Virus record (IMG/VR): IMGVR_UViG_3300050821_013430
Coordinates: 372,001-436,000 of that record
DNA length: 64,000 bases
Direction: 5' to 3' (one strand)
Shown here: piece after piece, positions 7,369 to 51,091 of the stretch
How the letters are laid out: each line of letters opens with the position of its first letter
Numbering within the stretch: position 1 is the stretch's first letter
The notes under the pieces: generated by a model
What the model was told of the DNA's origin: nothing
Databases searched by the model: none
What the model saw: only the letters and a program-made list of their open reading frames with translations
Position numbers and translations under genes: made by a program

Positions 7369-7424
7369 GAATGGCATTGATCTGCCATTGGACTCCTCGG
7401 CCCACTAACAGATCAATGCCATTC
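7369..7424. repeat. 16-bp perfect intergenic inverted repeat
   Basis: GAATGGCATTGATCTG / CAGATCAATGCCATTC with a 24-nt loop. Confidence 0.85.
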
Positions 7425-7467
7425 AGGCATGCTCCTTCCAGTCATGCCACGACTATGCTTACAGTGC

Positions 7468-8247
7468 TTATACCACGCTTACAGTGTCGATCATGGTAAT
7501 CGCTGGTGCAGGTGCAAGTCTTGCAAACTTGCGCTGATTGTCGAAGCCCAATTCCGCTGCCTCGACATCTCGTCTCCATTGCGGAACATTGGCCCCGAAG
7601 AGCAGTGTTTCCGTTCCTGGCCCGCCGATACGGATGACTACGCTGCCACCGACAGACAAAGTGAAAGGCGTCGAAACGCTATTCATGTAGGAGAACGGAG
7701 CGTTGGCTACCGTCGCCTTGCTGTTGAAGAAACTCTCGAACACGAAGTCGCTTACGGTAACTTCGACGCCGTTGATTACGATACCGTATGACACGTCCTC
7801 GACCGGGGTGCAAGCATCGAGCGCGTATGAGGTGTACCCGTCATCACAATAGGTGACATCAAACCGATTGAGGATCAGTTTGAGTATCTTGCGAGAGAGC
7901 GTTCCTGACACCGTATATTGATGCGGATTGGTGGGGTCTTGCACCATCACGGCTCCGCCGTTGTTTAGGATCTGATCAACGATCACGAACTCAGTGTCCT
8001 TGCCTCCTAAGGGATTGGTCACCACAGACGCGTTGCTGTCTATGATGGCGATTGTCCACGCCCAGTCAGGGGCTACCTGTCCCTTCGGGTAGAATTGGCA
8101 TCGTACATTCGAGATACGCCAAGCCGGTAGGAAGTGCAACCAGAGTTGGTTGTTGATTGCGTTTTGCATTGTTGCTACATCAACATCGTTGACGAGCGTT
8201 GAGTTGTTTACGATTGCTATTAGCATACTGTTCTCCTGTAAGGACAC
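7468..8247 (-). CDS. hypothetical protein, possibly a degenerate zincin-like fold
   Basis: 259 aa; TLSRKILKLI sits where related proteins usually show TLSHE (from recall); downstream CxxVE and VSDFV motifs. Confidence 0.55.
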   Translation of the reverse strand: MSLQENSMLIAIVNNSTLVNDVDVATMQNAINNQLWLHFLPAWRISNVRCQFYPKGQVAPDWAWTIAIIDSNASVVTNPLGGKDTEFVIVDQILNNGGAVMVQDPTNPHQYTVSGTLSRKILKLILNRFDVTYCDDGYTSYALDACTPVEDVSYGIVINGVEVTVSDFVFESFFNSKATVANAPFSYMNSVSTPFTLSVGGSVVIRIGGPGTETLLFGANVPQWRRDVEAAELGFDNQRKFARLAPAPAITMIDTVSVV

Positions 8248-8710
8248 TACTCTTACACGATCTCCATGATCGTTTTGTTGCTCCTCATCCTACAAGAGAT
8301 ACGCATATACACCCCCATTTCAGCGGGGTGAAAAGACGATTGTGGGATAACTCAGCAGTATCACCACCTTAGGGTAGAAGATAGTTGCTCGAATTACCGT
8401 CAATTGAGCATCGCCTCATCGTTTTGCCCTCTTTGGGAAGATAGGTCGGTCATACACCCACGACCACTTACCAATCGTGATAATCCAACTACTACCACCC
8501 TGAGACCATTGGAAACGAACTGCTCCAAACTTGTCCCAGCCGTATTGGGTGTAGGATGCGTCGCTCATTGTCGCCACCTGCTGCGTCCTTCGATCATCCA
8601 ATACCACTTGAATATGCTGATGACCCAAGTGGAATAGGCCACCCAACTTACCAGGGTGATATGGCACCACTTCGGGCCCCAGGTTTTGATCTGCATACCA
8701 GGAAGATCGT

Positions 8711-9079
8711 TCATCGGATGATCAGCCACTTGATTAGGATGGTCAGCCAGATGATACCCACGCCCGCAACATACCCCAGAAAGTCGGTGATGTTGTCGAA
8801 TGGCTGTTGCTTGGGCAGTTCGTAATTGGCGTCATACCAGAACTCCTTGACCGCGGCGAAGAGGATCATTCCGGCAGAGAGAATACCGATCACCATTAGG
8901 TTGGGAAGTGTTGGGTAGGCGATGATTGCGCCAATCGCCAGAATGAGTCCACACCAGCCAGAGTGGGCCATAAACGCAACGTAGTAGTTGTTGGCCATCC
9001 ATGAGTTGCTGATATGGGTTTTGAGCCAGGCTTGAATGCTGATGAGATGAGTTTTCAACCAGATGACGAAGTTGTTCAT
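8711..9079 (-). CDS. multi-pass membrane protein
   Basis: 3-4 hydrophobic helices. Confidence 0.6.
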   Translation of the reverse strand: MNNFVIWLKTHLISIQAWLKTHISNSWMANNYYVAFMAHSGWCGLILAIGAIIAYPTLPNLMVIGILSAGMILFAAVKEFWYDANYELPKQQPFDNITDFLGYVAGVGIIWLTILIKWLIIR

Positions 9080-9101
9080 TGACTTGCTCCTTTACTCAGC
9101 C

Positions 9102-9335
9102 TCATTGCCTAAGGAACGCGGCCTTGCTTACTGCTCGCGCTCGAATGCCCATCTCGTTTCTCTCGGTGAAGACCAGTTCCAACATCACGCATTGGGCAGC
9201 CCAATCAGCAATGCAGTCGTTGCATACATGCACTGATCCAATTCCTGATGCGTGTTGCATCACCTTGACTTTCAGAACGGTAGTTTTACAGAGGGCGCAG
9301 TAATGTCCATCGGCGACGCGGTAAGGAACGTCCAT
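9102..9335 (-). CDS. C4 zinc-finger protein
   Basis: CALC...CNDC. Confidence 0.5.
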   Translation of the reverse strand: MDVPYRVADGHYCALCKTTVLKVKVMQHASGIGSVHVCNDCIADWAAQCVMLELVFTERNEMGIRARAVSKAAFLRQ

Positions 9336-9336
9336 C

Positions 9337-9597
9337 TCAATGCACCTCGTATGTTGTTGGTTTGCCTTCCATCTTTGTCCTGATCCATTCCAATGCCTGC
9401 GTCTTCAATTCTCCCTCTGCGAAGGAGATGGTCTGCGGCATTCCGAAACGGATGAGGAAGTTGCTAAACTCCTCAATGGTGGATACCGAACACCAATCGC
9501 CCGGTGCAGCCTCCATCTTCGGATCGACGAAGAGGCGATACCCGAGCGTTCTCGGCTTGTAGATCTCGCTTTGATACTCCTTGTCCTTCTTACTCAT
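9337..9597 (-). CDS. hypothetical protein
   Basis: AGGAGAACGACCAATG start cassette. Confidence 0.5.
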   Translation of the reverse strand: MSKKDKEYQSEIYKPRTLGYRLFVDPKMEAAPGDWCSVSTIEEFSNFLIRFGMPQTISFAEGELKTQALEWIRTKMEGKPTTYEVH

Positions 9598-9824
9598 TGG
9601 TCGTTCTCCTTCTTCCAACACTTAGGGCATACATCGAAAGGAAACCACGGTGCCAGCCACTTCTCGCAAGTCTTTGTCTCACACTTCGACCAATCCAATC
9701 CACCGTTGTTAGGCATCTCACAGTCAGCAGTATCGCAGACACCGCAGTAGATCTCGTCGCCAATCGCGATAAACTCACTACCGCAATCCTCGCAGCAGTT
9801 TTCGCCAATCATCGTCTCACTCAT
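9594..9824 (-). CDS. Cys-rich zinc-binding protein
   Basis: Multiple CxxC motifs; GGAGAACGACAATG start. Confidence 0.55.
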   Translation of the reverse strand: MSETMIGENCCEDCGSEFIAIGDEIYCGVCDTADCEMPNNGGLDWSKCETKTCEKWLAPWFPFDVCPKCWKKENDQ

Positions 9825-10198
9825 TGTCGTTCTCCTTCCTCAATCCATAACACACCATTCGGATGGAACCTGAACCATATCCACGCCGCTAACTGTGCAG
9901 TACAATACCAGCGATAGTGTCGGACAACATCAGATGGGTAAGTGATCCGCCACATCACTTCTTCCTGAATTGGATGATGACGTCTGCATACGGATGCCCC
10001 TGCACATACCACCAGGCAGCCAGCCAGGCAGACCACTTCCAGCGGTAGTATCCGACCACGAACGGCATCTTGTCATCGCCTACTTCTCGGTCTCGCGCAA
10101 AGGTATCGACTACTCGCCAGTTCTTGGAGGCATTGGGATCGATGGTGGTAATGATGTCAGGAGTGCGATACGGTTGAGTCGTCATTGGATACGCTCTT

Positions 10199-10543
10199 TC
10201 ATGGCAACGAACACATCTGCACTTCTCGATTGGATCGCGAAGCCATTCCGCACGCCACTTGCTCTTTGGTCATCTTGTTGGAGCAGAAGGAGTAGAAGCG
10301 TCCAGTGGTGCCGTTGTCGCGAAACTCCTGATCGATCAATTCAGTAGCGACTTTCAGATGCAGCGCGTCATACTCGTGGTCGGGATCGAATTGAGTGGCG
10401 ATGGTCAGTGCGATGCTATGGGCGTAGAGCCGGTCGCAATCCTTGATGGACGCTTTGAGCGGCTTGTAGATGGCAGCATTGGAAGGATGGCGAGCGCATC
10501 CAAGGAAAGAGAGAACGAGGATGATGGGTAGATACTGCTTCAT
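10199..10543 (-). CDS. putative lipoprotein
   Basis: MKQYLPIILVLSFLG-C lipobox. Confidence 0.6.
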   Translation of the reverse strand: MKQYLPIILVLSFLGCARHPSNAAIYKPLKASIKDCDRLYAHSIALTIATQFDPDHEYDALHLKVATELIDQEFRDNGTTGRFYSFCSNKMTKEQVACGMASRSNREVQMCSLP

Positions 10544-11569
10544 GGTGATACTGCCTTTCAGTGGCACTTGTGGTTAGCAAGCCTTACGATGGCATATATG
10601 CCCATCTACGCATCTTACTCTATGATGATAGCAGTCTTTGATTCCGCCGTGATTATAGCAACTCGGATGCGCGGGATGACTGATACCATCGGATGGGGAT
10701 TTGGTATCGAAGAGGCAAGCGAGAACAAGGATGATGATGGCTGCCTTCATGACTTTTGGAAGCAGTCCAGAGAATTGATCAGTTTGACGCAACCCAATTC
10801 ATAACACGCCAAGCGTCTCCGTTCTCGATCTCCCCACTGAACTTGTCCAGCGAGGATGGTTAGATACTCGGCAGTCGGTTGAGAGATCACCACCAATCCA
10901 AATCTACCCAACAACCATCGTAGTAGTTTGGTCATAGGTCAAATCCTTCCAGTTCTTCGGCCCAATGCCGAAGTATGCGACTGATGGTGTGAGTGGGGCG
11001 CACGTCTCCCATAGGGGGATATGGCCAGAAGAGTAGGGAGACGATCCAGAGAAAGGCGACAATGCGAACGATGCGATGTTGGGTGGGGGTCATGGTGCTG
11101 CTTGTCCTCTATCTCTTACGCGTCCGGCAGATTGAGGATAGGGAGACAGTGAGTTTCGTTATGCTTCCTCACCTGATCGATGATCTTCCCCGCCCAGAAG
11201 TCGACATTGGCGATTGAACTCTCGCCGGTCGAGTATCGATAGGCGGAGAGATTGGCCTTGTTCCGCAGAAACAGGTAGGTATCGTCGACTTTCATCTTGC
11301 TGCTCCTATCTCGCGTGGTCGATACCAGCGCTTGTTCCTTCTACTATACAGCGGCCCTCTCGTTCGGAAGCCAAACTGCCGCTTCTCTCTCTTGCTTGGC
11401 CACATGATGCTGATGATAAAGCCAAACAGGATCAGTTGCAGGCATCTCGCAACGATCTTGAAACCGGCCGCAGTGTAATCCTCATCAGCAATGTTGAAGA
11501 CATCAAAGGATGGAATCAGGTTGATGGAATGCCAGCGGTGAACGGTAAAGTCCCAGTTGCTTGGCCTCA

Positions 11570-11797
11570 TCATACACCCCCGAGACGAATGACCCACCAC
11601 TCCGCGTCCGTCATCACCTGCACATCATCCACTCCCCATATCTTGTTGAACGCGTCGGTCAGATGTTCCTTGACCATCTCCGTGCACTTCTCGTCGCTCT
11701 CCTTGGCTTTGACGCTGATGTAGAGGGACATCTCGGGATCCAGTGGATCGTGCTTCTTGGATGAGAGGTGAAAGACCCAAACTCTTCGTTCGCTCAT
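11570..11797 (-). CDS. hypothetical protein
   Basis: ORF in tiling. Confidence 0.45.
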   Translation of the reverse strand: MSERRVWVFHLSSKKHDPLDPEMSLYISVKAKESDEKCTEMVKEHLTDAFNKIWGVDDVQVMTDAEWWVIRLGGV

Positions 11798-11990
11798 GGT
11801 CAATTCCGCTCCTGACTGCCTACGCTGGTGCAGGGGATCGGGTGCCATTCCTCACCGTTGAGCAGAAAGGCCACTTCCGTTTCGATGGTCGTATATACCT
11901 TGGCCTTGCTCAGGGACGGAGAGAAGACATCGGGAACGCCGGTGAAAAACTGTCCGTCCTTCTTGCGACGGATGACATAGACGAACTCGC

Positions 11991-12281
11991 TCATAGCCCC
12001 CTCCCTTGAATGCTAACCCAGCCCTCGGGCTTCTTCTCTTTGAGGTATCGGATGGTTTGGATGCCGAACCTCAGTGTCTCGTACATCTCCTCCAACTCAC
12101 GACGCTCCATAGAGATCGGATGAGTAATCCCTTTTTCCAGCGTTTCCACGATGCAGTATCCGCCATACACTTCGTCGTAATCGAGATGCCAGGTGCCAGG
12201 GTGATGTCCCACTTCCTTTCCCATCGCCCAGCAGTAATTCTCGAAGGCTCGGTTCAAGTTCTCTTCGGTAGGCCTCATCAC
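11991..12281 (-). CDS. hypothetical protein
   Basis: Coupled ORF in tiling. Confidence 0.55.
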   Translation of the reverse strand: MMRPTEENLNRAFENYCWAMGKEVGHHPGTWHLDYDEVYGGYCIVETLEKGITHPISMERRELEEMYETLRFGIQTIRYLKEKKPEGWVSIQGRGL

Positions 12282-12893
12282 TTTGCTCCTTGACTATTCT
12301 TCAACATGCCTCGCACGGTATACACCAGAAAGACAAACCACCCGCCTCCGCACACCACATACCCGATGTTATGCGGCAAACGGAACATCAGATAACTAGC
12401 CACGCAGGCGACCACAAACACTCCCACTACCGCGAGAGAATAGAGCACCGCTTTGATCCAGAGTTTCATTGTCGTTCTCCCTGTCTAATGAGGATCGTGT
12501 CGATCTTCGTATGCACGCTCGCCATCTCTTTGATCCCTATCTTTCTCTCTTGCTTCCAATGCTGCTACCTTCGCGCGTTCCTTGTCGAGCGAGGCAAGTA
12601 GTCCGCACGCGTGTCTCACCCGCATTGTCAGGACATCGTAATGTCGTTCGATGCCGAGAAACTCTCTGACATCTTGCTCCTCTTGCGGAGTTAGCGGATC
12701 GTGTTTCATTCGGGTGCTCCTTGAAAGGCAGTAGGATCGGCGAAGAAGAGTCGTTTGGCCGCGCCGAGATAGACCTTGCGAGCGGCAAGGTCTTTCTGAG
12801 AGGGCTCGCGCTTCTCGTGCGGCTTGTTGAGAATAGCGAGAGTGTCGAGAAGGACGAGTTTGTCGAGGACGAGAAACAGCATGGTCATTCCTT

Positions 12894-13376: not shown

Positions 13377-13383
13377 CGTCCTT

Positions 13384-14012: not shown

Positions 14013-14022
14013 TGAAGCCTCC

Positions 14023-14490: not shown

Positions 14491-14491
14491 A

Positions 14492-15091: not shown

Positions 15092-15103
15092 GGTAGTCCC
15101 CTT

Positions 15104-16165: not shown

Positions 16166-16945
16166 GGTGGTGTCCTTTCGGTGTCAGATGTCAGTTGAAC
16201 CAGAAGTGCTTGATGATGATTGCGACTGCGAAGATAAGGGTGGTGATGACGAACATGCGCATGTCTTTATCCTCCTTTGCCGAGCGAGGAACTTCCGCAT
16301 CGACTTTGCCCATTCAACGATGCCAATGGCTAAGGTCTGTTCGCGAGAATGCTCCAATCTCACCAGTCCGTTGCCATTGCGAAGGAAGCAGGTCATCCAA
16401 ACCTCGACTCGTGCTCGTGGTCTTTGCGGGTTTTGGTGTCGATACCAGAACATGATCCACACTTGGATTCGCCATAGGCCGCATTCCGATTGCAGCCGGG
16501 TGTGTTGCAGCGTCTCTTGGCTCGATTACGAAACTTCCAGGGATGATCGCTTGATTGTCGTGGCATTGTTGTTCTCCCTTTCTACGCAGACCATTGACTT
16601 TGTGTATCGGACGGAGTGGCGTTCTGCCAGAACATCCGCCACATCAGCATGTAGTACCACCAGTAGGCCGCTCTATCGCCTACTCCGTTCTTCCGATGAT
16701 CCATCTTACGCCTTCCAGTAGTTGGGATTGCACTCTCGCAACTCGTTGTCGGTGGCTTCTTGCCATTGAAGCCTCCATTCGAGACAGAAGCCCCACCACT
16801 GATTGATCAGTTTGGCGCGCTTGTCCATCTCATCCTTCCTTTCCCTTCATGAATGACTGAATAGTCAGCCACATCATTGGCGCAGAGATGGCAAAGATGG
16901 CGATCAACAGGACATGTAGCCACGGATTATCGGTATGTACGGGGT

Positions 16946-22765: not shown

Positions 22766-23694
22766 TCACTTACTCCTGTTCTCCGGTTCGACCCAATCGA
22801 TCCCTAACACTCGAAACAGGTCTTCCTCATTCTCCCCGCCCAACTTCTCATCCCCACGCCACACACCATACTCATTGACCGTTAGACCTTTGACCTGCGC
22901 CATAGTCCTTACGAAGATGTTCCACTCCCTGCTACCAGTACAGTGATTCAGCAGCGCCCCATAACTCTCCCTACCTGCGAACCAGAAGTCGCACTGTATC
23001 CCACCTTCGTCCGGCAGAGTGATACTGATCCTCTTCTCACCACCCGAGATCACCTCAAACGCGATCTTTCCTTGCATCAGAGCGTAGGATAGGTCGATCA
23101 CTTTCGTCTTTGACTCGTCGATGCAAACGGCGATGTCGATATCCTTAGCCGTTTCCAGTTTGCGACGGATACTCCCACACACCGTTGCATCCAACACATT
23201 GGGCAACGCCAACATACACTCTCGCACCTTGTCTGCAATCCTCTTTGCATCCTCATATGGGATGCGCTTCGACTCTTTCTTGGTGGTAGCCAGCACCGCT
23301 TCCGTCAGTTTGGGATCAAGTTTCCCCTCTCGTGCCGCTTCCACCAACGCTTCGATGCCGCTATAACCCTCCTCATACAGACGCATTGCTCGCTTAGGGC
23401 CAATTCCATGCACCACCGTCATGGTCAGCATTCCAATCGGATAGTCAGCGGCAAGAGTCTCGTACTTCTCGCTGGTGCCGTGTTCCAGAAACTCGCGGAT
23501 CACTTCTCGGATACTGACACCAACACCACGAACCAGTTTCAGGTTGCGTCTTCGATCGATTCTCCGGCGTATTCCATTTCCAGGATGCTCTTGGCCGCTT
23601 TCTCGTAGGCTTCCGTCTTGAAGTGGTTTTCACCGTTGAGTGTTTTGAGTTGCGAGATCAGTTTGAGATGATCAGCGACCTCTTGGTTTCGCAT
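22766..23694 (-). CDS. polX: DNA polymerase X family protein (no PHP domain), interrupted by a -1 frameshift near 23543-23630
   Basis: N-terminal MRNQEVADHL...AYEKAA in one frame; HhH GVG and GIGPK, GSIRR..KDID and third Asp (QCDF) in the other frame. Confidence 0.85.
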
Positions 23695-23950: not shown

Positions 23951-24026
23951 TGGTGCGCCAGGCCAGATTTGAACTGGCAACTCTTCGCTTAGAAGGCGAA
24001 GTTTCTATCCGTTGAATTACTGGCGC
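23951..24026 (-). tRNA. tRNA-Arg(UCU)
   Basis: Acceptor GCGCCAG/CTGGCGC, anticodon arm TTCGC-CTTCTAA-GCGAA, T-loop TTCAAAT, encoded CCA. Confidence 0.92.
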
Positions 24027-24561: not shown

Positions 24562-24717
24562 TATATAGTTCAGTGCAAGGAAACCGTTATAGCGATCAAG
24601 AGGCTATTCGCATCTGGCAAAACCAACAAGGAGATAGCCAAGAAGTTTGGTATGAAAGCCAGATACGTATGGCGTATCCGTACAGGAGAGATATGGTCTG
24701 ATCTTCAAGTCGAATAG
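24562..24717 (+). pseudogene. HTH fragment (homing-endonuclease C-terminal type), no canonical start
   Basis: Manual translation CKETVIAIKRLFASGKTNKEIAKKFGMKARYVWRIRTGEIWSDL; frame begins after a TGA. Confidence 0.5.
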
Positions 24718-24763
24718 ACTACCGATTCGACCCACCAATCACTTGATAGGCCGAGGCAGTAGC

Positions 24764-25288
24764 CTACAACGACTTGTTCACACTGATGTCAGCGTGCGCC
24801 GTAAGCGCGTAAGTCAGTGTCGGGCCATCACTGGGAATACTGCCAGTGAACCAGAAGTGCAACGACACCGGCCCACTTGACAGATACCGCAACATCGTTC
24901 CGTTGTCCATCGTAATGGGCAAGTTGACGCTGGTCGTTCCTGAAACATCCGTGTCGACCATCGTTGCTTCCGGCATTCCCCCTCCGTCTGTCTGAGGAGA
25001 CATCGTGATCTTGACATGGTTCATGAACGACAGATCACTTCCTGTGAGAACACTACTCGGGAAAGAGACACTGAGACCGCCGATCTTTCCCAGATTGGAA
25101 AGAGCACTACTGATGTCGTAGGTCTGCACCGTATCCACCGTTCCCGAAACACCCGGCGGAATAGGTACCGGACTTGCAGGAAGAGAGAAACTTTCGGAGA
25201 CAGAAGCATCATCCGAGGCAGTACCCTGTACGCATCCGATCGCACAGGCACACACGAGAGAGAGTAGAGAGAGTAGAGAGAGTTTCAT
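24764..25288 (-). CDS. putative lipoprotein
   Basis: ACAIG-C lipobox; beta-rich. Confidence 0.7.
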   Translation of the reverse strand: MKLSLLSLLSLVCACAIGCVQGTASDDASVSESFSLPASPVPIPPGVSGTVDTVQTYDISSALSNLGKIGGLSVSFPSSVLTGSDLSFMNHVKITMSPQTDGGGMPEATMVDTDVSGTTSVNLPITMDNGTMLRYLSSGPVSLHFWFTGSIPSDGPTLTYALTAHADISVNKSL

Positions 25289-37485: not shown

Positions 37486-37839
37486 CTACTTCCTCAATGC
37501 CCTTTCCGGCAAGGGAGGTGGTGAAGCCGCTTTCTTGTGCGATGCGCTGCTCTTGCGCTTCGGCGGTTCCGTAGGAGCCGGAATCCGAATCACTTCCGGC
37601 TGAGGGTCTTTCCCAGCATCCCTCACTGGGACGTTGCCTACCATAGCCTTGACCACCGTCCCACCATCGCCTACCCACGCCAGTTTCGCACCGTACAAGT
37701 GAAGGGCAAAGTTCGCCGAAGCGCGCTCCCACACTTGAACGACGGTATTGTCCACCAAAGTGAAGTCAATTCGGACTTGGTACTGATTGCCCCCTTTCGG
37801 GGGAACGCTGAATCCACGCGGAAGCGTGCTGATGTTCAT
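37486..37839 (-). CDS. hypothetical protein with Pro/Lys-rich tail
   Basis: AAAGGAG SD; follows a structured leader. Confidence 0.65.
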   Translation of the reverse strand: MNISTLPRGFSVPPKGGNQYQVRIDFTLVDNTVVQVWERASANFALHLYGAKLAWVGDGGTVVKAMVGNVPVRDAGKDPQPEVIRIPAPTEPPKRKSSASHKKAASPPPLPERALRK

Positions 37840-37867
37840 GTCTCGACTCTCCTTTCAGGTTGATTGC

Positions 37868-38037
37868 CGTAAGTCTGGCCACATCGACGGGGCGAGAGCG
37901 CGGATGTGTGGGGAGGGGATCCACGCTTCCTGCGACGACCGGATGTAGCCAGGCTTACGAGAGCCAAACCCAAACCCGTAGAAACGCCGATACCCGGCTA
38001 TCCGACAATCCAACGAAGGATCGGGATAGCCGGGTAT
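37868..38037 (-). ncRNA. structured intergenic RNA element (two long helices)
   Basis: 18-bp stem 37868-885/37942-959; 14-bp perfect stem 37990-38003/38024-037. Confidence 0.55.
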
Positions 38038-38066: not shown

Positions 38067-38585
38067 TTAGAACAGCCGCTTTTCGGCGTGGGCATCGAGG
38101 TCTCCCATCGCCTTTTCCGCGGAAGTACGCCTGGGGAAAGGCCCCCACGCGCGCTCACACGAACCGAGGTTGTCCGACGTCGGAGCCTTGTCCGTCTGAA
38201 CGATTCCGTAATCACTTCCGTCGTACACGACGTAAGACGGGCCCTTCGGCAGAATGGGGTGCACTCGCGTCCCGTCCTCATTCAGAGCGGGCTTTCGACC
38301 GCGCGGCTTGTATTCGCCGGAATCCTCCGACGTCTCCTCACCATTCTCGATCTTCTCCTTCATCGCCTCGAACTCCGAAACGAGATATCCGAGAACGCTG
38401 GCAACTGCCGGATCATTGGAATCCTCATTGGCTTCCGTGATCTTGGCAATCACCATGTTCAGGACGTTCACCCGAGGACTCGTGCGCGTCTTGCGCTCAC
38501 CAAACGACATCAGCTCTTCCATCGTACTTCTCCGTATGTTGGCTCCCAATGTGGGAGCGGTTTCGACCAACGGCTGAGGCAACAT
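38067..38585 (-). CDS. hypothetical protein (GC-rich, probable early gene)
   Basis: Downstream of a TTGTCA-16-TAGGTT promoter; start uncertain (38585 or MEELM). Confidence 0.6.
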   Translation of the reverse strand: MLPQPLVETAPTLGANIRRSTMEELMSFGERKTRTSPRVNVLNMVIAKITEANEDSNDPAVASVLGYLVSEFEAMKEKIENGEETSEDSGEYKPRGRKPALNEDGTRVHPILPKGPSYVVYDGSDYGIVQTDKAPTSDNLGSCERAWGPFPRRTSAEKAMGDLDAHAEKRLF

Positions 38586-39709: not shown

Positions 39710-39948
39710 TGTTTCACCTCCACCAACCGATACAACTTCTTGGTATCCGTGTCGTAGAGCAGCACCTCTCCGCCCACATCCTCTGCATCCGCATACACCA
39801 CATTGGGGCCATGTAGGTATTGGGCTAAGTAGGCGGAATCATACTTCCAGGCAGAGGAAAGCGGGCCCCATTGAAGATCGCTATTCAGAAACTGATTCAG
39901 ATGTTTGGGATGCCGAATCACCAGAGCCAGATCGTCGATGTATCTCAT
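39706..39948 (-). CDS. hypothetical protein containing the 32-bp repeat
   Basis: ATGA overlaps at both ends. Confidence 0.6.
   Translation of the reverse strand: MRYIDDLALVIRHPKHLNQFLNSDLQWGPLSSAWKYDSAYLAQYLHGPNVVYADAEDVGGEVLLYDTDTKKLYRLVEVKQ
39811..39842. repeat. 32-bp exact direct repeat, copy 1
   Basis: ATGTAGGTATTGGGCTAAGTAGGCGGAATCAT, identical to 51570-51601. Confidence 0.95.
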
Positions 39949-41536: not shown

Positions 41537-41824
41537 TCAGACCTCTCCCAAGATGTCGAAGATGTTGGCCGTAGGAACCACCGGAGCGGCGGGGGTGGGA
41601 TGCTTGGCGTTGAGAGACTCCCAGCGGTTGAACTGCCCACGCACGATGACATTGCCGTTCTGATGCTTCAAAGTCTGCGCATTCCCCATCTCGGAGAACT
41701 TGGGCGGGGAAGCGGCACGATCCTGCGACACCGTGCCACGATTGTTGGATCGATTGTGGCGACGGAATCCCGACTTGCTCGCCTTGTTTTCCGACTTGTC
41801 CGCACTCTTGTTCTGCTTGGCCAT
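41537..41824 (-). CDS. basic low-complexity protein
   Basis: GGGAG SD; in tiling. Confidence 0.55.
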   Translation of the reverse strand: MAKQNKSADKSENKASKSGFRRHNRSNNRGTVSQDRAASPPKFSEMGNAQTLKHQNGNVIVRGQFNRWESLNAKHPTPAAPVVPTANIFDILGEV

Positions 41825-41860: not shown

Positions 41861-41902
41861 CTGCGATTGACTGCGAACGATTTCGCTCGGAATCAAACGC
41901 AG
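41861..41902. terminator. long imperfect intergenic hairpin
   Basis: CTGCG/CGCAG, TTGA/TCAA and CGAACGA/TCGCTCG stacked stems; function not established. Confidence 0.4.
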
Positions 41903-41953
41903 AGAATTAGAACCCAGGACGGAGCGGATATAGGTGTAGGTAAGGAGTTCAAC

Positions 41954-42640: not shown

Positions 42641-42718
42641 TGGCGTCCCCATCCGGGCTCGAACCGGAACCAACAGATTGAAAGTCTGTCCGCCTAACCA
42701 GTTAGCAGATATGGGGAC
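42641..42718 (-). tRNA. tRNA-Glu(UUC)
   Basis: Acceptor GTCCCCA/TGGGGAC, G discriminator, ACAGA-CTTTCAA-TCTGT, T-loop TTCGAGC, CCA; slightly long D-arm. Confidence 0.88.
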
Positions 42719-42728
42719 ATACACTACT

Positions 42729-44260: not shown

Positions 44261-44276
44261 TGTCCCACCTCTCCCT

Positions 44277-45474: not shown

Positions 45475-45719
45475 TGTCCTACCTTCAATTCCTTTTCGAT
45501 CTCTCCGAAGTCCCTGTCGTACTCTTCCCACGCCAGTACGATACCGTGGGAGGTGTTAGTCCAGCGCTTACCATTGAAGTCCAGGTAGGTGCCGGTGTTC
45601 TGATAATCGACCACCATTCGCGCCAACATCCGCTTGGAACGCAGCATGGTGGGGATGGGATCACATCCGGTGTACATGTGCTTACCCCTTCCTTCTCTTT
45701 CGGGGGAAATTGGCTCGAA

Positions 45720-45908
45720 TCAGTCGGAGGCATTCCTGCCAGGTGAGAACACCTGCGCCACCATCGTCCAAAACGACCCAGATGGGATCACACGCTGGGG
45801 GAGTGTTGAAGTATCCCCTGATGTATCCGTAAGTAGCCGTGGTATCGAAGTCTTGCCGCGGCTTGCTTACGGGTAGGGATGGCGAGCAGGCGAAGTAAGA
45901 TGACTGCC
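45720..45908 (-). ncRNA. structured intergenic RNA element
   Basis: About 16-bp stem 45827-45872 nested in further stems; 5' end carries GCAGTCATCTTAC. Confidence 0.45.
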
Positions 45909-45909
45909 T

Positions 45910-46119
45910 TCATTTCCCCTCCTCATACCACCTCAGGATGGCTTTGAGGGTTTCGGGGGAGAGGATGACACTTTGCATTCCCGCACCCTCACCCTGGGTG
46001 ATCTTGAAGGTGGATTCCCCATCATGTAGGGAAAGGTAGTCGATCCACTTGACCACCTCGACCTTGGGCGTCTCTTCCGCCCCACCACTGAAACACATCT
46101 TGTCGCCGATCTTGCGCAT
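45910..46119 (-). CDS. hypothetical protein
   Basis: GAGGTAAGG SD. Confidence 0.55.
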   Translation of the reverse strand: MRKIGDKMCFSGGAEETPKVEVVKWIDYLSLHDGESTFKITQGEGAGMQSVILSPETLKAILRWYEEGK

Positions 46120-46124
46120 GTTCC

Positions 46125-46307
46125 TTACCTCCCCTTCTTGGAATACACCGCCCGCAGCGAGACGATGGCCAGGGCTACGAACAGACAGGTGCTCCAGGCC
46201 ACTTCGAGGGTATTCAAGTTGAAGGCGGTGTGGGAGAGTGCGGGGAAGAAGAAGTACAGCATCCAGGTGGTGGCGATGGCAAACCCGATGGCAACGAACG
46301 CTTTCAT
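46125..46307 (-). CDS. small two-TM membrane protein (paralog of 37223)
   Basis: AF..N...V.W..CLF..LA.VSL..V..KK shared. Confidence 0.7.
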   Translation of the reverse strand: MKAFVAIGFAIATTWMLYFFFPALSHTAFNLNTLEVAWSTCLFVALAIVSLRAVYSKKGR

Positions 46308-46399
46308 GACATCCTCCGAGGTTGTGGGTGGTTGAACGCAAGTGAAACCTGCCAGCGAAGCGCCGCTTGAACAAGCGACAAGGTAAGATGACTGCGACC

Positions 46400-46696
46400 T
46401 CAGGCTGTCTTCGCCTCCTTGGCGAGCTCCCGACACACTCTGCACGGCTCCTTGTGGATGCAGGTGCCGGTCTCCTTCAATTCAGACGATTGGGCGGTGA
46501 TCTCGTACACCGTCTCCGCCTTGGGGAGCAGACCGTACTCCGAACTCGCGATGTAGGTCTTGGCAGTCGGGCCGGTGCCCAGGGTGAGAGTGGCGATCCC
46601 AGTGTAAGTAGACCAGTCCCCTTCCTTCCGATTGCCTGCCACCCCCGCCACGATTCGGAACCGTCCGTGATTGTCGTACTCGATGGTGAATTGCAT
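46400..46696 (-). CDS. hypothetical protein
   Basis: AAGGAG SD. Confidence 0.6.
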   Translation of the reverse strand: MQFTIEYDNHGRFRIVAGVAGNRKEGDWSTYTGIATLTLGTGPTAKTYIASSEYGLLPKAETVYEITAQSSELKETGTCIHKEPCRVCRELAKEAKTA

Positions 46697-46720
46697 GTGA
46701 GTATCTCCTTGTGTGGGTGG

Positions 46721-46996
46721 TTAGCGGCCGAGGTAGTCCAGCAGGTTCTCGTCTCCCCCGCCGAAGTCCTCTTCCCCACCTTGTGCGCTGCCTCGGTTGG
46801 CCTTGGGGATGATTGAGAACACGTTCATCGAAACGCGTACCTGTCCGTGCTCTCCGTCCTTTCCGCACACCCGCTGAGGGCCGCGGCTGCTGTAGATGAT
46901 CTGGCTCTTGCCGGTCTTGCTCTGTCCCACCTTCTGGCTCAAATCGAGCCGAATGGTGAGAATGTCTCCGTCCAGGCTCATATCGATCTCTTGCAT
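46721..46996 (-). CDS. small beta-rich conserved hypothetical protein
   Basis: LTIRLDLS..G.SKTGKS..I.SS.G. Confidence 0.6.
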   Translation of the reverse strand: MQEIDMSLDGDILTIRLDLSQKVGQSKTGKSQIIYSSRGPQRVCGKDGEHGQVRVSMNVFSIIPKANRGSAQGGEEDFGGGDENLLDYLGR

Positions 46997-47040
46997 GACA
47001 CTTGTTCTCCTTGTCGGTTGTTGTGGGTTGGATGTAGGGG

Positions 47041-47337
47041 TTAGGCGGACTTGAGCCACGCTGACATGTCCATGCTCTCCTCTCCCGTCTTGTAGACGGT
47101 CGAGGTGTTCTCCGGGTCGACGTTTCCGCCGTTCTGCTCCAATTCGTTCACCGTGTCGCCGAGGAGGAGGTTCAGCAGGGCGAAGCCGGAAGCATACTCC
47201 AAGACTACACGTCGGGCCTCATGGTAGTTGCCTTCCTCACCTCGGGTCTCGATCTCCGCCCGAACAGCCTTGCGGCTCAGGGCGCGAATGGGGGCGTTGC
47301 CGCAGTTGCTCTCAGCAATCCAATATGCCAGTTGCAT
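47041..47337 (-). CDS. hypothetical protein
   Basis: GGAG SD after a structured leader. Confidence 0.6.
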   Translation of the reverse strand: MQLAYWIAESNCGNAPIRALSRKAVRAEIETRGEEGNYHEARRVVLEYASGFALLNLLLGDTVNELEQNGGNVDPENTSTVYKTGEESMDMSAWLKSA

Positions 47338-47359
47338 GATGATCTCCGTTGTTGAGCCC

Positions 47360-47590
47360 CCTTGGGGGCGGTTGTCGTTTCGTATCCCAAGTTATCCCAG
47401 CAGTCAGCCCACATGAACGCAGAATGTGGCGGGGTATCGACGAGGCCCATTCCAGCCCCTCATCCCGTCTGACATTCCCACAATTACCCCCGTTGAAGGT
47501 AAAGCGGGGCTTTCATGTAGGCTGACTGCTGAGGGGCTCCCAACCGGAGCCCGCAGACCGAAACCCCCTAAGGGATACCCTTGGAGGCTT
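47360..47590 (-). ncRNA. multi-branch structured intergenic RNA
   Basis: 20-bp stem 47398-417/47512-531 (one G-U on minus); flanking hairpins GGGCTCC/GGAGCCC and GCCCCC/GGGGGC. Confidence 0.55.
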
Positions 47591-47602
47591 CAATCCGACA
47601 TC

Positions 47603-47848
47603 TCAGTCCAAGTGCCCACCCGTTCGGGGCGTAGGCACACCGTTGCTACCTCCGCCTACTTCCTGCCACGGCATTCCCGCATCATCCCAGGTTGGCGCCC
47701 CGCAAGGGATGCCTTGTTGATGCGCCGTGTAGCAGAAGTCAGGATACTGTTGCCCACCGTCATCCGCGGTGGGGGTGTAGTCTACCGGGCCCGCACCATA
47801 GGCGCAGCCGCTCAACATCACGCACGCTGCCATCAGGTATCGAGCCAT
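47603..47848 (-). CDS. small lipoprotein
   Basis: VMLSG-C; DDGG/DDAG motifs. Confidence 0.6.
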   Translation of the reverse strand: MARYLMAACVMLSGCAYGAGPVDYTPTADDGGQQYPDFCYTAHQQGIPCGAPTWDDAGMPWQEVGGGSNGVPTPRTGGHLD

Positions 47849-48126
47849 TGTTGCACCTTTGCTTCCTTTGCCTACAGTGTGGTTTTTGACGCCTTCGCAC
47901 TCTTCCGCACCTTATCCTACCTTTGCCTTCTCGAACTCCGCCAGGATCACATCCACCGATGCGATGGCTTCCTGCACCAATTCGGTCTCGATGCTGGCTT
48001 GCTCGATGTAGTCATCCGCACACATCAGCACCTTTTCCTTTCCCAGCCGGTGGATGGCAGGTAGATTGACTTCCTCCAAGGTGAGAATGCGACCGCAGAA
48101 GAAACAGCCGTAGATGTGGGCCATTG

Positions 48127-48444
48127 TCAGTACCCCATCTCGATTACTTCGTTCTCGGCCGCAATGTCAGCCTGCCTCCGACAGAAGGCGCAAGTGGGCT
48201 CACACATCCCATCGCATCCCACCTCCTCGGCTTCGGCGCTCAGGTCGAGCACCCCCGGCTCCTCCGCCATCGGCACCAGTTTCAGCACCTTGTCGTACAT
48301 CGTGTTCAGGGTGCCGTGCAGCTCCTTGTCCCCACACTCCGACATGTGGGCTCGGATGAGACGACGAAGCAGGCTCAGCTCCATCGCGGTGAATTGAGAG
48401 TCCATGTAGTCCTCCTGGGGTGGATGTGGTTGAATGTGCGCCAA
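48127..48444 (-). CDS. hypothetical protein with C-terminal Cys cluster
   Basis: Start probably MDSQF (GGAGG SD). Confidence 0.5.
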   Translation of the reverse strand: MAHIQPHPPQEDYMDSQFTAMELSLLRRLIRAHMSECGDKELHGTLNTMYDKVLKLVPMAEEPGVLDLSAEAEEVGCDGMCEPTCAFCRRQADIAAENEVIEMGY

Positions 48445-48537
48445 AGTCTGCCCCGGGCTCCCTATCTGTCCGCTTCTCTCCGGTGCGTGGGGGTCTATGG
48501 GTGGAGAGAGGCTAACAGGAGACCGAGGCAGACTTTG
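48442..48537 (-). ncRNA. structured intergenic element
   Basis: 11-bp perfect stem CAAAGTCTGCC/GGCAGACTTTG extended by nested stems. Confidence 0.45.
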
Positions 48538-48859
48538 ACGGGGGATGTGGCTAAATACCTACATCCCCCTACATGCGCCAGAAACACTTGTAGCCAGGAG
48601 CAGAACCGAAGTCCCACTCCCAGCTACTTGTCAGGGGAAGGAGAGCAAATGCTCACACTTCCGCCCATTGTCAGACAGACGGAGGAAGATGCGTACCACC
48701 TCCCCCGAGATGCCCCACTCCTCTCCCACATCGTAGGCCCAGGTAGAGAAGACGCAGCTATCGCCGATACGCACCTTGCGCTGAAAGGTAGGATGCCACA
48801 TCAGGGCCAGGCTGAACTGTACGGCGAGGTACTCCAAGGCACGGAGATGTAGGGTCATC

Positions 48860-49084
48860 TCAGTACCCCACCGGCATGAAACCTACACTCTTGCACTTGG
48901 GGCACTTGGGTGAGTCCTTGGTGATTCCCAGCCCGCGGTAGAAGGCCACACGATCGGCGGGCATAGGCTTCTTGTGATCCTTGTGCCCACATTCCTCACA
49001 CCGCCAGAACGGCTTGGGAGGTGTGATCTCACCTACGGGCATGTCGTCGCCGGACACGAAATCGTCATCGAAGTCGTTCATCAT
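48860..49084 (-). CDS. zinc-ribbon protein
   Basis: CEECG...CPKC. Confidence 0.6.
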   Translation of the reverse strand: MMNDFDDDFVSGDDMPVGEITPPKPFWRCEECGHKDHKKPMPADRVAFYRGLGITKDSPKCPKCKSVGFMPVGY

Positions 49085-49291
49085 CCCACCTCCGTGTAGT
49101 GAAAAGCGTACAGGTACGGGGGGCCATCCACCCGCACGTTCGTCCGTCGACGCACCCTCTTACCTTTGACCAACTCCTCGTACACGGGGAGCGGCTCCTG
49201 GGAGAAGATGCCATCTCGGCGCTGATGTAGGGAAGCAAGCGCCAATGCGACTACCTCGGCAGAAAAGACACCCATCATCCCACCTCCTCGT

Positions 49292-49702
49292 TCAATCCGT
49301 TGGACAACCCGACTCGTACCACATGGTACGAGCATCGTCTGCTCTGTCTTGCGCCACCTGACGTTGGTACTTGAGGTACGCAGCCAGGTGCTCCTTCTGC
49401 TCCGGTGTGGTACAAGCGTCCCCATCCACCACCAGAACCACGTTCTTGCCCCCACACACCTCACAGGGGACGTCGTACATCCCACCTCGTGAGAAGTAGG
49501 CTTCCCTTTCCTCACTGCCGGGCTCGAACGCCTCGTCGAACTCCTCTTGTGAGTAGGCGTGGTTGCCGATGCTCGGTGTCAGGTGAGTGCCGTGTCCATC
49601 GCACTTGGAGCACACTTCGTGCTTGTGTGGGAGGAGTGCGACCACCTCGTCCCCGGTTTCGACGTCGTGGTAGGTGACTTCCCGACTTTGGGGCCGCATC
49701 AT
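49292..49702 (-). CDS. DnaJ-type zinc-finger phage protein
   Basis: CSKCDGHG...YDVPCEVCGG. Confidence 0.6.
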   Translation of the reverse strand: MMRPQSREVTYHDVETGDEVVALLPHKHEVCSKCDGHGTHLTPSIGNHAYSQEEFDEAFEPGSEEREAYFSRGGMYDVPCEVCGGKNVVLVVDGDACTTPEQKEHLAAYLKYQRQVAQDRADDARTMWYESGCPTD

Positions 49703-50369
49703 CCCACCTCCTCCTCTTCCTCCTCACACTCGTCTTTGTCCTCTGCCATCATGCCCGACATATAGGCGACCGTGCGCCTGTCCTCGCACTCCGCCCACAC
49801 TTCCGCCATTTCCCGACGTTGATCCCTGGGAGCCTTCATTGTCATACCTCCTCACAACCTGCCATACCATATGATAGGCTGTGAGGAACTATCCCACATG
49901 CTGCCCCAAACGCAGAAAACACGAATCCCCAGAAAGGAGCCTTGTGGCCCCTTTCCAGGGTGAATGTAGGTGGATGCCCTACTTGACTCGTTCCGCCTCA
50001 CCTTGTGGGATGTCCTGCACCCCGAAGCGCTGCTGTAGGGTCATTGTCCCCATAGCGCCCAGGTTGTAGTCAAAGGTGACCACGGTGTGGGTTCCTTCCC
50101 GCTTGACTACGGTAACCTCCCACACTTGGCCATACTTGACCGAAAGGTGGGCGCGGATGGTAGGCGAGATGTCGTTCATTGTCCTACCTACCACGCCACC
50201 GCGACCAGACAAGCCACCACGTAGGCCAGTGCCGCACCATAGGCGATGATGTTGTTCATTGTGTGTCTTCTCCCTTCGTGTCGGTTGGGAAACTACAACG
50301 GCCCCAAACCTCCCGTGTATGGGAAGTTAGGGGCCGGAGGGTAGTTCTCCTACCTTGTAGGCTGGGAAC

Positions 50370-50885
50370 CTACTTCGCCGCGGGGGGAGTCACCTTGACG
50401 CAAAGCGTCTTGGATGCGTCCGCAAGGCGCGTCACGACGAAACCGAGTTCCTTACAGCGGATCGCGACTTGCTCGATCGCCATTCCGCTCTCGAATGCCT
50501 CGGAAAGCGCCGAACACGGCACGTTGTACGACCCGGGGAAACCGCCGAGCGAGGCACGCAAGCCAGCGGAAAGCCCGTTGTACTCGGCGCGGCGCGTCTC
50601 GTACTCTTCCGCATACGGCCCCATGAGATTCGCCAGATCCGCGCGAATCTGTTTCTCGGCCTCGCGCTTCCGCTCGGTCGCCATGAACGAAAGCGACTTG
50701 ATCACGCGATCGTTGACGGTACGGATCGTGTCGGGAGTCAGCACCTTGTCGCCGAGAGCCTTGCCGTTGGGCCAGGCATTGGCGAAGATTGCGTGCAAGG
50801 TCGACAGTGCCTCGGTCGCCGCGCTCTCTTCCGTCTCGGAAAGGACCAGAACCTTGTTACTCGTGTCGCTGGGAATCATGGCCAT
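50370..50885 (-). CDS. hypothetical protein, first gene of the leftward region (GC-rich)
   Basis: CAGGAG SD; downstream of a TTGCGC-17-TAGGTT promoter. Confidence 0.7.
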   Translation of the reverse strand: MAMIPSDTSNKVLVLSETEESAATEALSTLHAIFANAWPNGKALGDKVLTPDTIRTVNDRVIKSLSFMATERKREAEKQIRADLANLMGPYAEEYETRRAEYNGLSAGLRASLGGFPGSYNVPCSALSEAFESGMAIEQVAIRCKELGFVVTRLADASKTLCVKVTPPAAK

Positions 50886-50948
50886 GATGACGTATCTCCT
50901 GTTATGTCCCATGTGGGACGGTTGGGTTACTACTGAACGCTACTGCTA

Positions 50949-51091
50949 CGTAGCGGTTAGAACCTAAGGCGCCGCGAAGCACCGCGCAACGTGGCATACT
51001 ACTTGCCTTAGATGCTAACCGCTACGGGAAACGATGTAGGGGGAACCTATACAGTGTGGCTCGACTCCTTACATCGTTTCCGTATCCTGGT
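50949..51091. repeat. two tandem long inverted repeats
   Basis: CGTAGCGGTTAG...CTAACCGCTACG (12 plus 7 bp) and GGAAACGATGTA...TACATCGTTTCC (12 bp). Confidence 0.8.
50957..50989 (-). promoter_or_regulatory. sigma70-type promoter (-35/-10 at 50984-89 and 50961-66)
   Basis: TTGCGC-17 bp-TAGGTT. Confidence 0.5.

What the first reader, a model, noticed from the sequence alone, without database searches (positions are those of the whole stretch)
7369..51091. Long intergenic helices punctuate the leftward region, several sharing a CTACAT/ATGTGG helix
Seen: long stems (11-20 bp, mostly extended by stacked stems) at 7369-7424, 37868-959, 37990-38037, 41861-902, 45827-872, 47398-531, 48442-537, 50949-51026 and 51027-91, mostly without U-tails. 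On the minus strand the same U-G-containing helix (5' CUACAU...AUGUGG 3') occurs at 16868-920, 37868-959 and 47398-531, and flipped at 48541-67. The 3' arms GGCCAGACU, GGGCUGACU and GGGCAGACU are alike. Established: T7 and SP82 early polycistronic RNAs are cut by RNase III at intergenic stems. Inference: a shared processing or stabilisation signal, or a binding site for a phage RNA-binding protein.
Basis: partly seen in the sequence, partly recalled or inferred. Interest (0 to 1): 0.6.

Follow-up and report, generated by a model that had tools for sequence, protein, structure and literature searches.

The report
Sense-strand RNA hairpins between megaphage genes
A 473-kb soil phage carries unusually long RNA stem-loops in the gaps between its small promoter-proximal genes; three share one conserved basal helix, and they are most likely RNA processing or stability signals of a known general kind, with no cleavage shown.

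Summary
The window is part of a 472,749-bp IMG/VR phage record in which nearly all genes from 0 to 424 kb lie on the minus strand.

- **Real:** ten fold far better than shuffles (z -4.2 to -8.1).
- **Chance:** 16868-920 (z +0.3) sits inside a small ORF.
- **Different things:** 41861-902 is a palindrome between divergent genes, one of them an HTH regulator. 45827-872 lies in a 41-codon ORF and folds better on the plus strand.

The "shared helix" is really a three-member family:
- A: 37867-960
- B: 47396-533
- C: 48439-540

All three have the same basal helix, with two invariant U·G pairs and five compensatory pair changes. No other copy exists in the genome, in five related phage records, or in Rfam.

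Within the window, noncoding strand-specific structures favour the sense strand 8 to 0, so these act as RNA.

The best reading is intergenic RNA processing or stabilising elements. The simple hairpins may be leaky terminators, and A/B/C may be recognition sites for a dsRNA nuclease such as host RNase III or for a binding protein.

No cross-species covariation and no RNA ends could be obtained. Interest is modest.

The parts
37867..37960 (-). Element A. A 94-nt RNA with a 17-18 bp basal helix and a C-rich apical loop. It ends 27 nt before the start codon at 37839.
   Evidence: -44.8 kcal/mol, z -6.3. Matches the basal-helix pattern. R1 score 104.6 bits as a training sequence.
47396..47533 (-). 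Element B. A 138-nt RNA with a 22-bp closing helix (two of the pairs U·G) around a three-way junction. It ends 58 nt before the start codon at 47337.
   Evidence: -70.2 kcal/mol, z -6.3. Minus strand -75.3 against plus strand -66.5. Pattern match.
48439..48540 (-). Element C. A 102-nt RNA with an 18-bp basal helix and a C-rich loop. It ends 33 nt before the AGGAGG-ATG at 48405.
   Evidence: -49.1 kcal/mol, z -5.6. Pattern match. Downstream ORF shown.
37990..38037 (-). Simple long hairpin (14+6 bp), 29 nt after the stop codon at 38067 and 30 nt before element A. It is followed by a weak U-rich stretch.
   Evidence: -33.4 kcal/mol, z -7.4. Sequence context.
7369..7424 (-). The longest simple hairpin (19+5 bp, three G·U pairs), midway between genes 7468-8226 and 6715-7329. 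Its tail is UGGUUUUGAU.
   Evidence: -36.6 kcal/mol, z -8.1. With flanks, minus strand -49.8 against plus strand -32.6.
47555..47596 (-). 19-bp hairpin with 5 G·U pairs, starting just after the stop codon of gene 47603-47818.
   Evidence: Minus strand -26.4 against plus strand -12.4.
47534..47552 (-). 7-bp GC hairpin between the 47555 hairpin and element B.
47356..47369 (-). 5-bp GC hairpin between element B and the Shine-Dalgarno sequence of gene 47041-47337.
48590..48627 (-). 17-bp hairpin with a UUCG loop, 5 G·U pairs and the tail AAGUGUUUCU. Terminator-like.
   Evidence: Minus strand -25.4 against plus strand -11.1. Flagged by the terminator scan.
48540..48569 (-). It has an A·C mismatch on the minus strand and a G·U on the plus strand.
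   Evidence: -19.9 against -19.3, so no strand preference. z -4.2.
49927..49960 (-). 15-bp hairpin with a tetraloop and the tail AUUCGUGUUU. Terminator-like.
49850..49886 (-). 16-bp hairpin in the same gap, just upstream of the next start codon.
50299..50336 (-). 15-bp hairpin in the gap 50180-50369.
   Evidence: -28.7 kcal/mol.
50949..51026 (-). Leader hairpin (12+9 bp), 63 nt upstream of the first leftward gene, which starts at 50885.
   Evidence: -42.9 kcal/mol, z -5.7. No strand preference. RNA-library contigs stop on either side of it.
51027..51081 (.). Leader hairpin abutting the previous one with no spacer. It folds slightly better on the plus strand.
   Evidence: z -4.4. Plus strand -28.5 against minus strand -23.8.
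24714..24767 (-). 23-bp hairpin with 6 G·U pairs at the 3' end of gene 24764-25288.
   Evidence: Minus strand -32.3 against plus strand -10.8.
41861..41902 (.). Imperfect 17-bp palindrome in the 128-nt gap between divergent genes. It is probably an operator or 5'UTR element and not part of the family.
   Evidence: HTH_38 hit in the plus-strand ORF. Start codons located.
45827..45872 (+). Hairpin inside a 41-codon minus-strand ORF. It is more stable on the plus strand and its status is unclear.
16868..16920 (-). Not a structure. It is a chance CTACAT/ATGTGG pair inside a small ORF.
   Evidence: z +0.32. ORF seen.
50886..52692 (-). 1.8-kb noncoding control region at the head of the leftward gene array. 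It holds the promoter-like TGGCAYG motifs.

Best explanation
The helices are cis-acting RNA structures in the sense (minus-strand) transcripts of the promoter-proximal, small-gene part of a very long leftward gene array.

The intergenic spacers are built as cassettes. One or two simple, long, G·U-rich hairpins follow the upstream stop codon. In three spacers a larger element (A, B or C) then ends 27-58 nt before the next start codon.

Inferred roles:
- The simple hairpins attenuate transcription and/or protect upstream mRNA 3' ends.
- A/B/C are recognised through their shared basal helix, roughly 5'-UCRn(n)AGYCWGSCU...GGSCWGACU(n)nYGG-3' with two invariant U·G pairs. The recogniser would be a dsRNA-specific factor, most simply the host's RNase III, as at the T7 early intergenic sites. 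Alternatively it is a phage RNA-binding protein.
- Cleavage would separate cistrons and leave stem halves that set mRNA stability and translation.

Shown: the structures, their positions, the sense-strand bias and the shared helix. Inferred: transcription, recognition and cleavage.
For: - **Stability.** z -4.2 to -8.1 for ten stems.
- **Excess and clustering.** Perfect noncoding inverted repeats are in excess and cluster in genome 367-423 kb.
- **RNA level, sense strand.** A symmetric scan of both strands finds noncoding structures favoured by 6 kcal/mol or more on one strand 8:0 for minus inside the window, and 11:2 over 360-424.7 kb. Individual hairpins carry 3-6 G·U pairs that become A·C mismatches on the other strand.
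- **Shared helix.** The pattern AGYCWGSC...GSCWGRCT hits only A, B and C in 473 kb. Of 13 aligned pairs, 7 are invariant, including a U·G, and 5 change on both sides. A 14th pair, U·G, is also invariant by inspection.
- **Mutual similarity.** The three pairwise similarities are among the top 6 of 378 hairpin pairs, about p 0.01 for a closed triangle.
- **Not a duplication.** The flanking genes are unrelated, so the similarity does not come from a segmental duplication.
- **Helix length.** Helices of 17-24 bp match the two-turn substrate of bacterial RNase III. Most T7 transcripts carry such a site (PMC3867540).
- **Few U-tails**.
- **RNA library.** A soil metatranscriptome holds contigs identical to 50716-50917 and 51097-51424. 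These flank the two leader hairpins but do not include them.
Against: - No RNA ends or cleavage were observed. The RNA-library contigs are shallow (depth 2-7), could be DNA carry-over, and stop 16 and 32 nt away from the stems, not inside them.
- There is no covariation from relatives. The compensatory changes among A/B/C follow partly from each having been picked as a hairpin.
- The minus strand also folds better in coding DNA (29 against 16 dense structures), so part of the strand bias is compositional.
- A, C and the leader hairpins show no strand preference.
- The phage has no RNase III or dsRBD gene, and the host is unknown.
- Related megaphages lack A/B/C.
Confidence: 0.4

Rival explanations
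1. The hairpins are transcription terminators or attenuators without canonical U-tracts, or with weak distal ones. They meter read-through along the array, as the stem-loops of T4-type PeSL cassettes do.
For: Several simple hairpins sit 3-44 nt after stop codons. They are followed by short U-rich stretches: UGGUUUUGAU after 7369, GUUUCU after 37990 and 48590, and GUGUUU after 49927. Two pass the terminator scan. PeSL stem-loops were shown to terminate transcription (PMC2839356).
Against: Terminator-like sites are not enriched (9 found against 11.8 expected). A/B/C and the leader hairpins have no U-tail. They sit just upstream of Shine-Dalgarno sequences, after a first hairpin. Stems of 17-24 bp enclosing 50-100 nt are atypical for intrinsic terminators.
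Confidence: 0.2
2. The elements act at the DNA level. They would be recombination or cassette boundaries that shuffle small genes (PeSL-like), relics of inverted-repeat mobile elements, or protein-binding palindromes.
For: A/B/C flank unrelated ORFan genes. They lie in a region that shares few genes with the syntenic relative G002. 41861-902 lies between divergent genes next to an HTH regulator. A, C and the leader hairpins fold equally well on both strands.
Against: Apart from the basal helix there is no sequence repeat family. No target-site duplications are visible. Sigma-70-like promoters are depleted (3 found against 8.7 expected). The invariant U·G pairs and G·U-rich stems would be mismatches in DNA cruciforms.
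Confidence: 0.12
3. A/B/C are stand-alone stable small RNAs cut out of the transcripts, for example decoys or regulators. They would then be more than cleavage signals.
For: They measure 94-138 nt and have a long closing helix, like processed RNAs. A and C have C-rich apical loops containing CCUCC-like runs that could pair with Shine-Dalgarno sequences. B has a three-way junction.
Against: Their interiors share no sequence or architecture. There is no Rfam match. The phage has no Ro60 or RtcB partner for a Y-RNA-like reading. No RNA contig covers them, although the RNA run hardly covers the stretch at all.
Confidence: 0.1
4. The structures have no function. They would be by-products of high GC content and G-rich sense-strand composition, picked out by eye.
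For: GC is highest here, at 55-58%. The minus strand folds better in coding DNA too. One listed stem is chance. The 6-mer match alone is expected by chance among about ten stems.
Against: Dinucleotide shuffles never reach the observed energies. Perfect repeats of 11-16 bp lie only in noncoding gaps of this region. The triple similarity of A/B/C has p of about 0.01.
Confidence: 0.08

Closest known systems
RNase III processing sites of the phage T7 early region (R0.3-R1.3), and the analogous SP82 sites
   Same: They are intergenic stem-loops in polycistronic phage transcripts. Helices span about two turns. The phage relies on the host enzyme. From memory of the T7 and SP82 literature, several sites within one phage resemble each other. 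PMC3867540 supports the 22-bp idealised substrate and the statement that most T7 transcripts carry a site.
   Different: No cleavage has been shown here. The T7 sites have a characteristic internal loop at the scissile bond, whereas A/B/C have a nearly perfect basal helix around a large variable interior. The host and its RNase III specificity are unknown. Only three elements share sequence.
PeSL (promoter-early stem-loop) cassettes of T4-type phages (PMC2839356, PMC4122927)
   Same: They are structured intergenic cassettes placed immediately upstream of small ORFan genes in a plastic genome region. They end with a Shine-Dalgarno sequence and start codon, and their stem-loops act as attenuators.
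   Different: PeSLs contain a strong sigma-70-like promoter and are conserved over about 100 bp. Here sigma-70-like sites are depleted. The spacers leave no room for a promoter. Only a basal helix is shared, among three elements.
REP/BIME-type intergenic hairpins that protect upstream mRNA from 3' exonucleases
   Same: They are stable hairpins just after stop codons, lack U-tails, and sometimes occur in arrays.
   Different: REPs are a high-copy sequence family. These hairpins are each unique in sequence.
HK022 put RNAs (two adjacent stem-loops that make RNA polymerase terminator-resistant)
   Same: The two abutting leader hairpins at 51081-50949 lie between the promoter-like region and the first gene of a very long array. 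This resemblance is recalled from memory only.
   Different: There is no sequence or covariation evidence. A/B/C lie after terminator-like hairpins, not before them. Not testable here.

Membership tests
Bacterial RNase III processing site | Coaxial double helix of about 20-22 bp (two A-form turns) | tested here: met
   Helix lengths: 7369 has 19+5 bp, 37990 has 14+6, B has 22, A has 17-18, C has 18, 50949 has 12+9 and 48590 has 17. The criterion is taken from PMC3867540.
Bacterial RNase III processing site | Staggered cleavage leaving 2-nt 3' overhangs within the helix | not testable with these tools
   Only assembled contigs of one RNA run were available. They stop 16 and 32 nt outside the leader stems.
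Bacterial RNase III processing site | Proximal and distal boxes free of antideterminant base pairs for the cognate enzyme | not tested
   The host, and therefore the enzyme's specificity, is unknown. The phage encodes no RNase III.
Intrinsic (factor-independent) terminator | GC-rich stem with a short loop, followed at once by a U-tract (at least 5 U in 8) | tested here: not met
Only 48590-48627 and 49927-49960 pass. The site count is not above shuffles.
PeSL cassette (T4-type phages) | Strong sigma-70-like early promoter inside the cassette | tested here: not met
   Three promoter-like sites in 17 kb against 8.7 expected, and none in the structured spacers.
PeSL cassette (T4-type phages) | Sequence conservation among copies over about 100 bp | tested here: not met
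   blastn-short finds no repeats among the spacers. Only 13-18 basal pairs are shared by three elements.
MITE or other inverted-repeat mobile element | Multiple copies with similar interiors and target-site duplications | tested here: not met
   The interiors are unrelated and there are no flanking direct repeats.
Any Rfam family (including Y RNA, put-like or riboswitch families) | Covariance-model match at or above the gathering score | tested here: not met
   Only two tRNAs reach the gathering score. Permissive scans give chance-level hits only. The phage has no Ro60 or RtcB gene.

The most novel reading that the evidence does not exclude
A, B and C define a new phage cis-RNA motif. It is a roughly 18-bp basal helix with two invariant U·G wobble pairs 12-13 bp apart and a conserved AGYC/GACU box, closing a variable interior. 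A dedicated factor, possibly phage-encoded, would read it to cut or gate the first cistrons of a 424-kb unidirectional transcription programme.
Probability: 0.2. Interest if true: 0.6.

Novelty: new member of a known kind. Interest (0 to 1): 0.35.

Why it matters
Megaphages of 400-500 kb are known almost only from metagenomes, and how they express hundreds of same-strand genes is unknown. If these spacers are processing or attenuation signals, they mark where the long leftward transcripts are cut or metered. The shared A/B/C helix would then be a concrete, testable recognition element.

The structures themselves resemble what T7, SP82 and T4-type phages already do, so they are not surprising in kind. 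With only one genome and no RNA ends, the claim stays at the level of well-supported structure with inferred function.

Tried and rejected
- **Repeat family or MITE.** blastn-short of every stem against the genome found only self-hits.
- **IS200/IS605 ends or omega RNA.** The two TnpB genes lie 5 kb or more from any listed stem.
- **Rfam.** No family matched.
- **Y RNA with Ro60.** The phage has no TROVE or RtcB gene.
- **Phage-encoded RNase III or dsRBD protein.** None found.
- **Sigma-54 activator.** The only PF00158 hit is a ClpB-like chaperone. There is no sigma-54 gene.
- **Covariation in relatives.**
  - Proteins flanking A and B have no relatives in IMG/VR.
  - The metagenome scan returned only the same phage at 99.994% identity.
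  - The gene downstream of B has no homologue.
  - Homologues of the gene upstream of 7369 exist in other megaphages, but in other contexts and without the hairpin.
- **Covariance model R1 built from A/B/C.** It found only its training copies in the genome and nothing in five related records.
- **Syntenic relative G002.** The 394-kb record was fetched whole. Its core is syntenic at about 45-55% amino-acid identity, but the small-gene region shares few genes and no flanking pairs.
- **Public phage records.** No DNA similarity was found.
- **My own scans.** A genome-wide energy scan with loose criteria was uninformative.

Full report
**Context.** The window is bases 372,001-436,000 of a 472,749-bp IMG/VR virus record rated complete. 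It derives from soil metagenomes. I laid the whole record in the script box and called genes with a crude codon-usage caller of my own, so gene coordinates are approximate.

Almost every gene from 0 to about 424 kb is on the minus strand. From 240 to 424 kb the genes are small, about 100 aa on average. GC rises steadily from 46% to 56% towards a 1.8-kb noncoding stretch at window 50886-52692. No public phage record resembles the region.

**The observation.** Every named coordinate holds the stated inverted repeat. Ten of the eleven fold far better than 200 dinucleotide shuffles, with z from -4.2 to -8.1. The exception is 16868-920 (z +0.32), which lies inside a small ORF.

The excess is real genome-wide:
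- There are 113 perfect inverted repeats of 10 bp or more, against 47-65 in five shuffles.
- The nine repeats of 11 bp or more that lie wholly in noncoding DNA all fall in genome 367-423 kb.

Two listed stems are different things:
- 41861-902 lies in the 128-nt gap between a minus-strand gene starting at 41824 and a plus-strand HTH-domain gene starting at 41953. It is best read as an operator-type palindrome.
- 45827-872 lies inside a 41-codon ORF that is coupled to the upstream gene by an ATGA overlap. It folds much better on the plus strand.

The spacers at 47338-47602 and 48338-48648 are almost completely filled with three or four consecutive helices.

**The shared helix.** The CUACAU...AUGUGG pair is weak evidence. 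It occurs 11 times on the minus strand, and CTACAT is frequent in coding sequence, usually as CTACATC. Comparing the elements in full shows more.

A (37867-960), B (47396-533) and C (48439-540) share the whole base of the helix. It reads approximately 5'-U C R n (n) A G Y C W G S C U ... G G S C W G A C U (n) n Y G G-3'. A pattern for its core hits these three places and nothing else in 473 kb.

On the alignment, 13 basal pairs give:
- 7 invariant pairs, including the closing U·G;
- 5 pairs changed on both sides;
- 1 mismatch cell.

Among 28 strong hairpins from the whole genome, the three mutual similarities of A, B and C are among the six best of 378 pairs. My estimate for such a closed triangle is about p 0.01. 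The pattern was derived from the elements themselves, and each was picked as a hairpin, so these figures describe the similarity and are not an independent test.

The interiors are unrelated: 58-110 nt, with C-rich loops in A and C and a three-way junction in B. The flanking genes are also unrelated. So this is not a segmental duplication. A covariance model built from the three finds no further copy in the genome or in five related phage records.

**RNA or DNA, and which strand.** I scanned both strands of genome 360-424.7 kb with the same criteria.
- Noncoding dense structures number 20 on the minus strand and 12 on the plus strand.
- Those that favour the scanned strand by 6 kcal/mol or more number 11 on minus and 2 on plus.
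- Inside the window the count is 8 to 0.
- The two plus-specific ones lie outside the window, in another noncoding stretch that carries plus-strand promoter-like motifs.

Individual hairpins hold 3-6 G·U pairs that become A·C mismatches on the other strand. For example, 48590-627 folds at -25.4 against -11.1, and 24714-67 at -32.3 against -10.8.

Part of this bias is compositional, because coding DNA also folds better on the minus strand (29 against 16). A, C and the two leader hairpins show no preference. Taken together, the data favour function as sense-strand RNA for most of the helices.

**What they do.**
- *Terminators.* Canonical terminators are not the answer for the named stems. Only two unnamed hairpins pass the terminator scan, and such sites are not enriched. 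Several simple hairpins do sit 3-44 nt after a stop codon and are followed by short U-rich runs, so leaky termination or 3'-end protection is plausible for that subclass.
- *A/B/C.* They lie after such a hairpin and end 27-58 nt before the next start codon. The spacer leaves no room for a promoter, and sigma-70-like sites are depleted.
- *Helix length.* Helices of 17-24 bp match the two-turn substrate of bacterial RNase III, which processes most T7 transcripts (PMC3867540).
- *Enzyme source.* The phage has no RNase III or dsRBD gene, so a host enzyme would be used, as in T7.

I therefore rate [quoted passage not shown] as the best explanation, at about 0.4. The rivals are attenuators (0.2), DNA-level cassette boundaries (0.12), stand-alone small RNAs (0.1) and no function (0.08).

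**Expression evidence.** One soil metatranscriptome from another study holds contigs identical to 50716-50917 and 51097-51424. These cover the first gene and the leader upstream of the two abutting hairpins (51081-50949), but not the hairpins themselves.

This fits leftward transcription from the promoter-like cluster. It also fits loss of the hairpin segment through processing or poor reverse transcription. However, depth is only 2-7, contigs cannot show ends or strand, DNA carry-over is not excluded, and I had no second call to lay a control stretch.

**Relatives.** Covariation across species could not be tested.
- The metagenome scan returned only the same phage at 99.994% identity.
- Homologues of the gene upstream of 7369 occur in other megaphages in different contexts, without the hairpin.
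- The 394-kb record G002 is syntenic in the core at about 45-55% amino-acid identity. It shares few genes and no flanking pairs in the small-gene region.

**Comparison with known systems.**
- *T7/SP82 RNase III sites.* These are the nearest functional analogues. Membership cannot be claimed, because cleavage is untested.
- *PeSL cassettes of T4-type phages* (PMC2839356). They share the placement before ORFan genes. Their defining promoter and their roughly 100-bp conservation were tested here and not met.
- *REP-like, MITE, Rfam and Y-RNA readings.* All were tested and not met.

**Verdict.** The one new item is a three-member RNA motif with a conserved wobble-containing basal helix. Interest is modest at 0.35.

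Noticed in passing
window 50886-52692 (minus strand), and genome 369,458-369,660 (plus strand; window -2542 to -2340): A 1.8-kb noncoding region heads the leftward array. It carries five minus-strand TGGCAYR-N4-T..C motifs at 51698-52481 (four of them 64-71 nt apart), out of eight window-wide on both strands against 2.2 expected. By eye there are about eight TGGCAYG copies on this strand. Two have the full sigma-54 -24/-12 consensus (TGGCATGGGTTTTGCA and TGGCACGATTCTTGCA). Two more full-consensus copies lie on the plus strand about 55 kb away, beside plus-strand-specific structures. The phage has no sigma-54 gene and no enhancer-binding protein; its only PF00158 hit is ClpB-like. These could be promoters or iterons.
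   Followed up: partly
whole record; window 1-52000: Nearly all genes from 0 to 424 kb lie on one strand. GC declines smoothly from about 56% next to the noncoding region to about 38% far downstream. The cumulative GC-skew minimum lies at window 50-51 kb, which could mark an origin or a main divergence point. The syntenic relative G002 shows no such gradient.
   Followed up: partly
window 51570-51601 and 39811-39842 (minus strand): An exact 32-nt repeat, ATGATTCCGCCTACTTAGCCCAATACCTACAT, occurs at both places. A third copy of its first 20 nt, with 2 mismatches, lies at 51495-51514. The source assembly breaks at the repeat. Its function is unknown.
   Followed up: partly
window 51097-51424: A noncoding leader segment appears in a soil metatranscriptome at higher contig depth (7.1) than the first gene (2.2). 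It may be an abundant leader or a noncoding RNA.
   Followed up: no
window 1287-2522 (-) and 56099-57220 (+): Two TnpB-type (OrfB_IS605 plus Cas12f1-like TNB) genes lie inside the phage. Their omega RNAs and element ends were not examined.
   Followed up: no
window 6715-7329 (-): The product has a signal peptide (MKKTMMCAVVAMATTMVAPAYAQ) and a glycine- and aromatic-rich, beta-barrel-like sequence ending in an aromatic-rich tail. This hints at an outer-membrane protein and a Gram-negative host.
   Followed up: no
window 22766-23503 (-); 23951-24026 (-); 42641-42718 (-): The small-gene region also holds a family X (Pol beta-like) DNA polymerase, plus tRNA-Arg(TCT) and tRNA-Glu(TTC) genes.
   Followed up: no
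window 45677-45912 (minus strand): After the 41-codon ORF that contains the 45827 hairpin, another frame stays open for about 74 codons. It has a protein-like sequence but no ATG or GTG start, only a late TTG. A frameshift or a miscalled start is possible.
   Followed up: no
genome 360,612-360,694 and 370,640-370,701 (window -11388 to -11306 and -1360 to -1299): Further long, strongly minus-strand-specific noncoding helices lie just outside the window. One is 83 nt with an 18-bp base, the other a 62-nt hairpin. They belong to the same class but lack the A/B/C box.
   Followed up: partly
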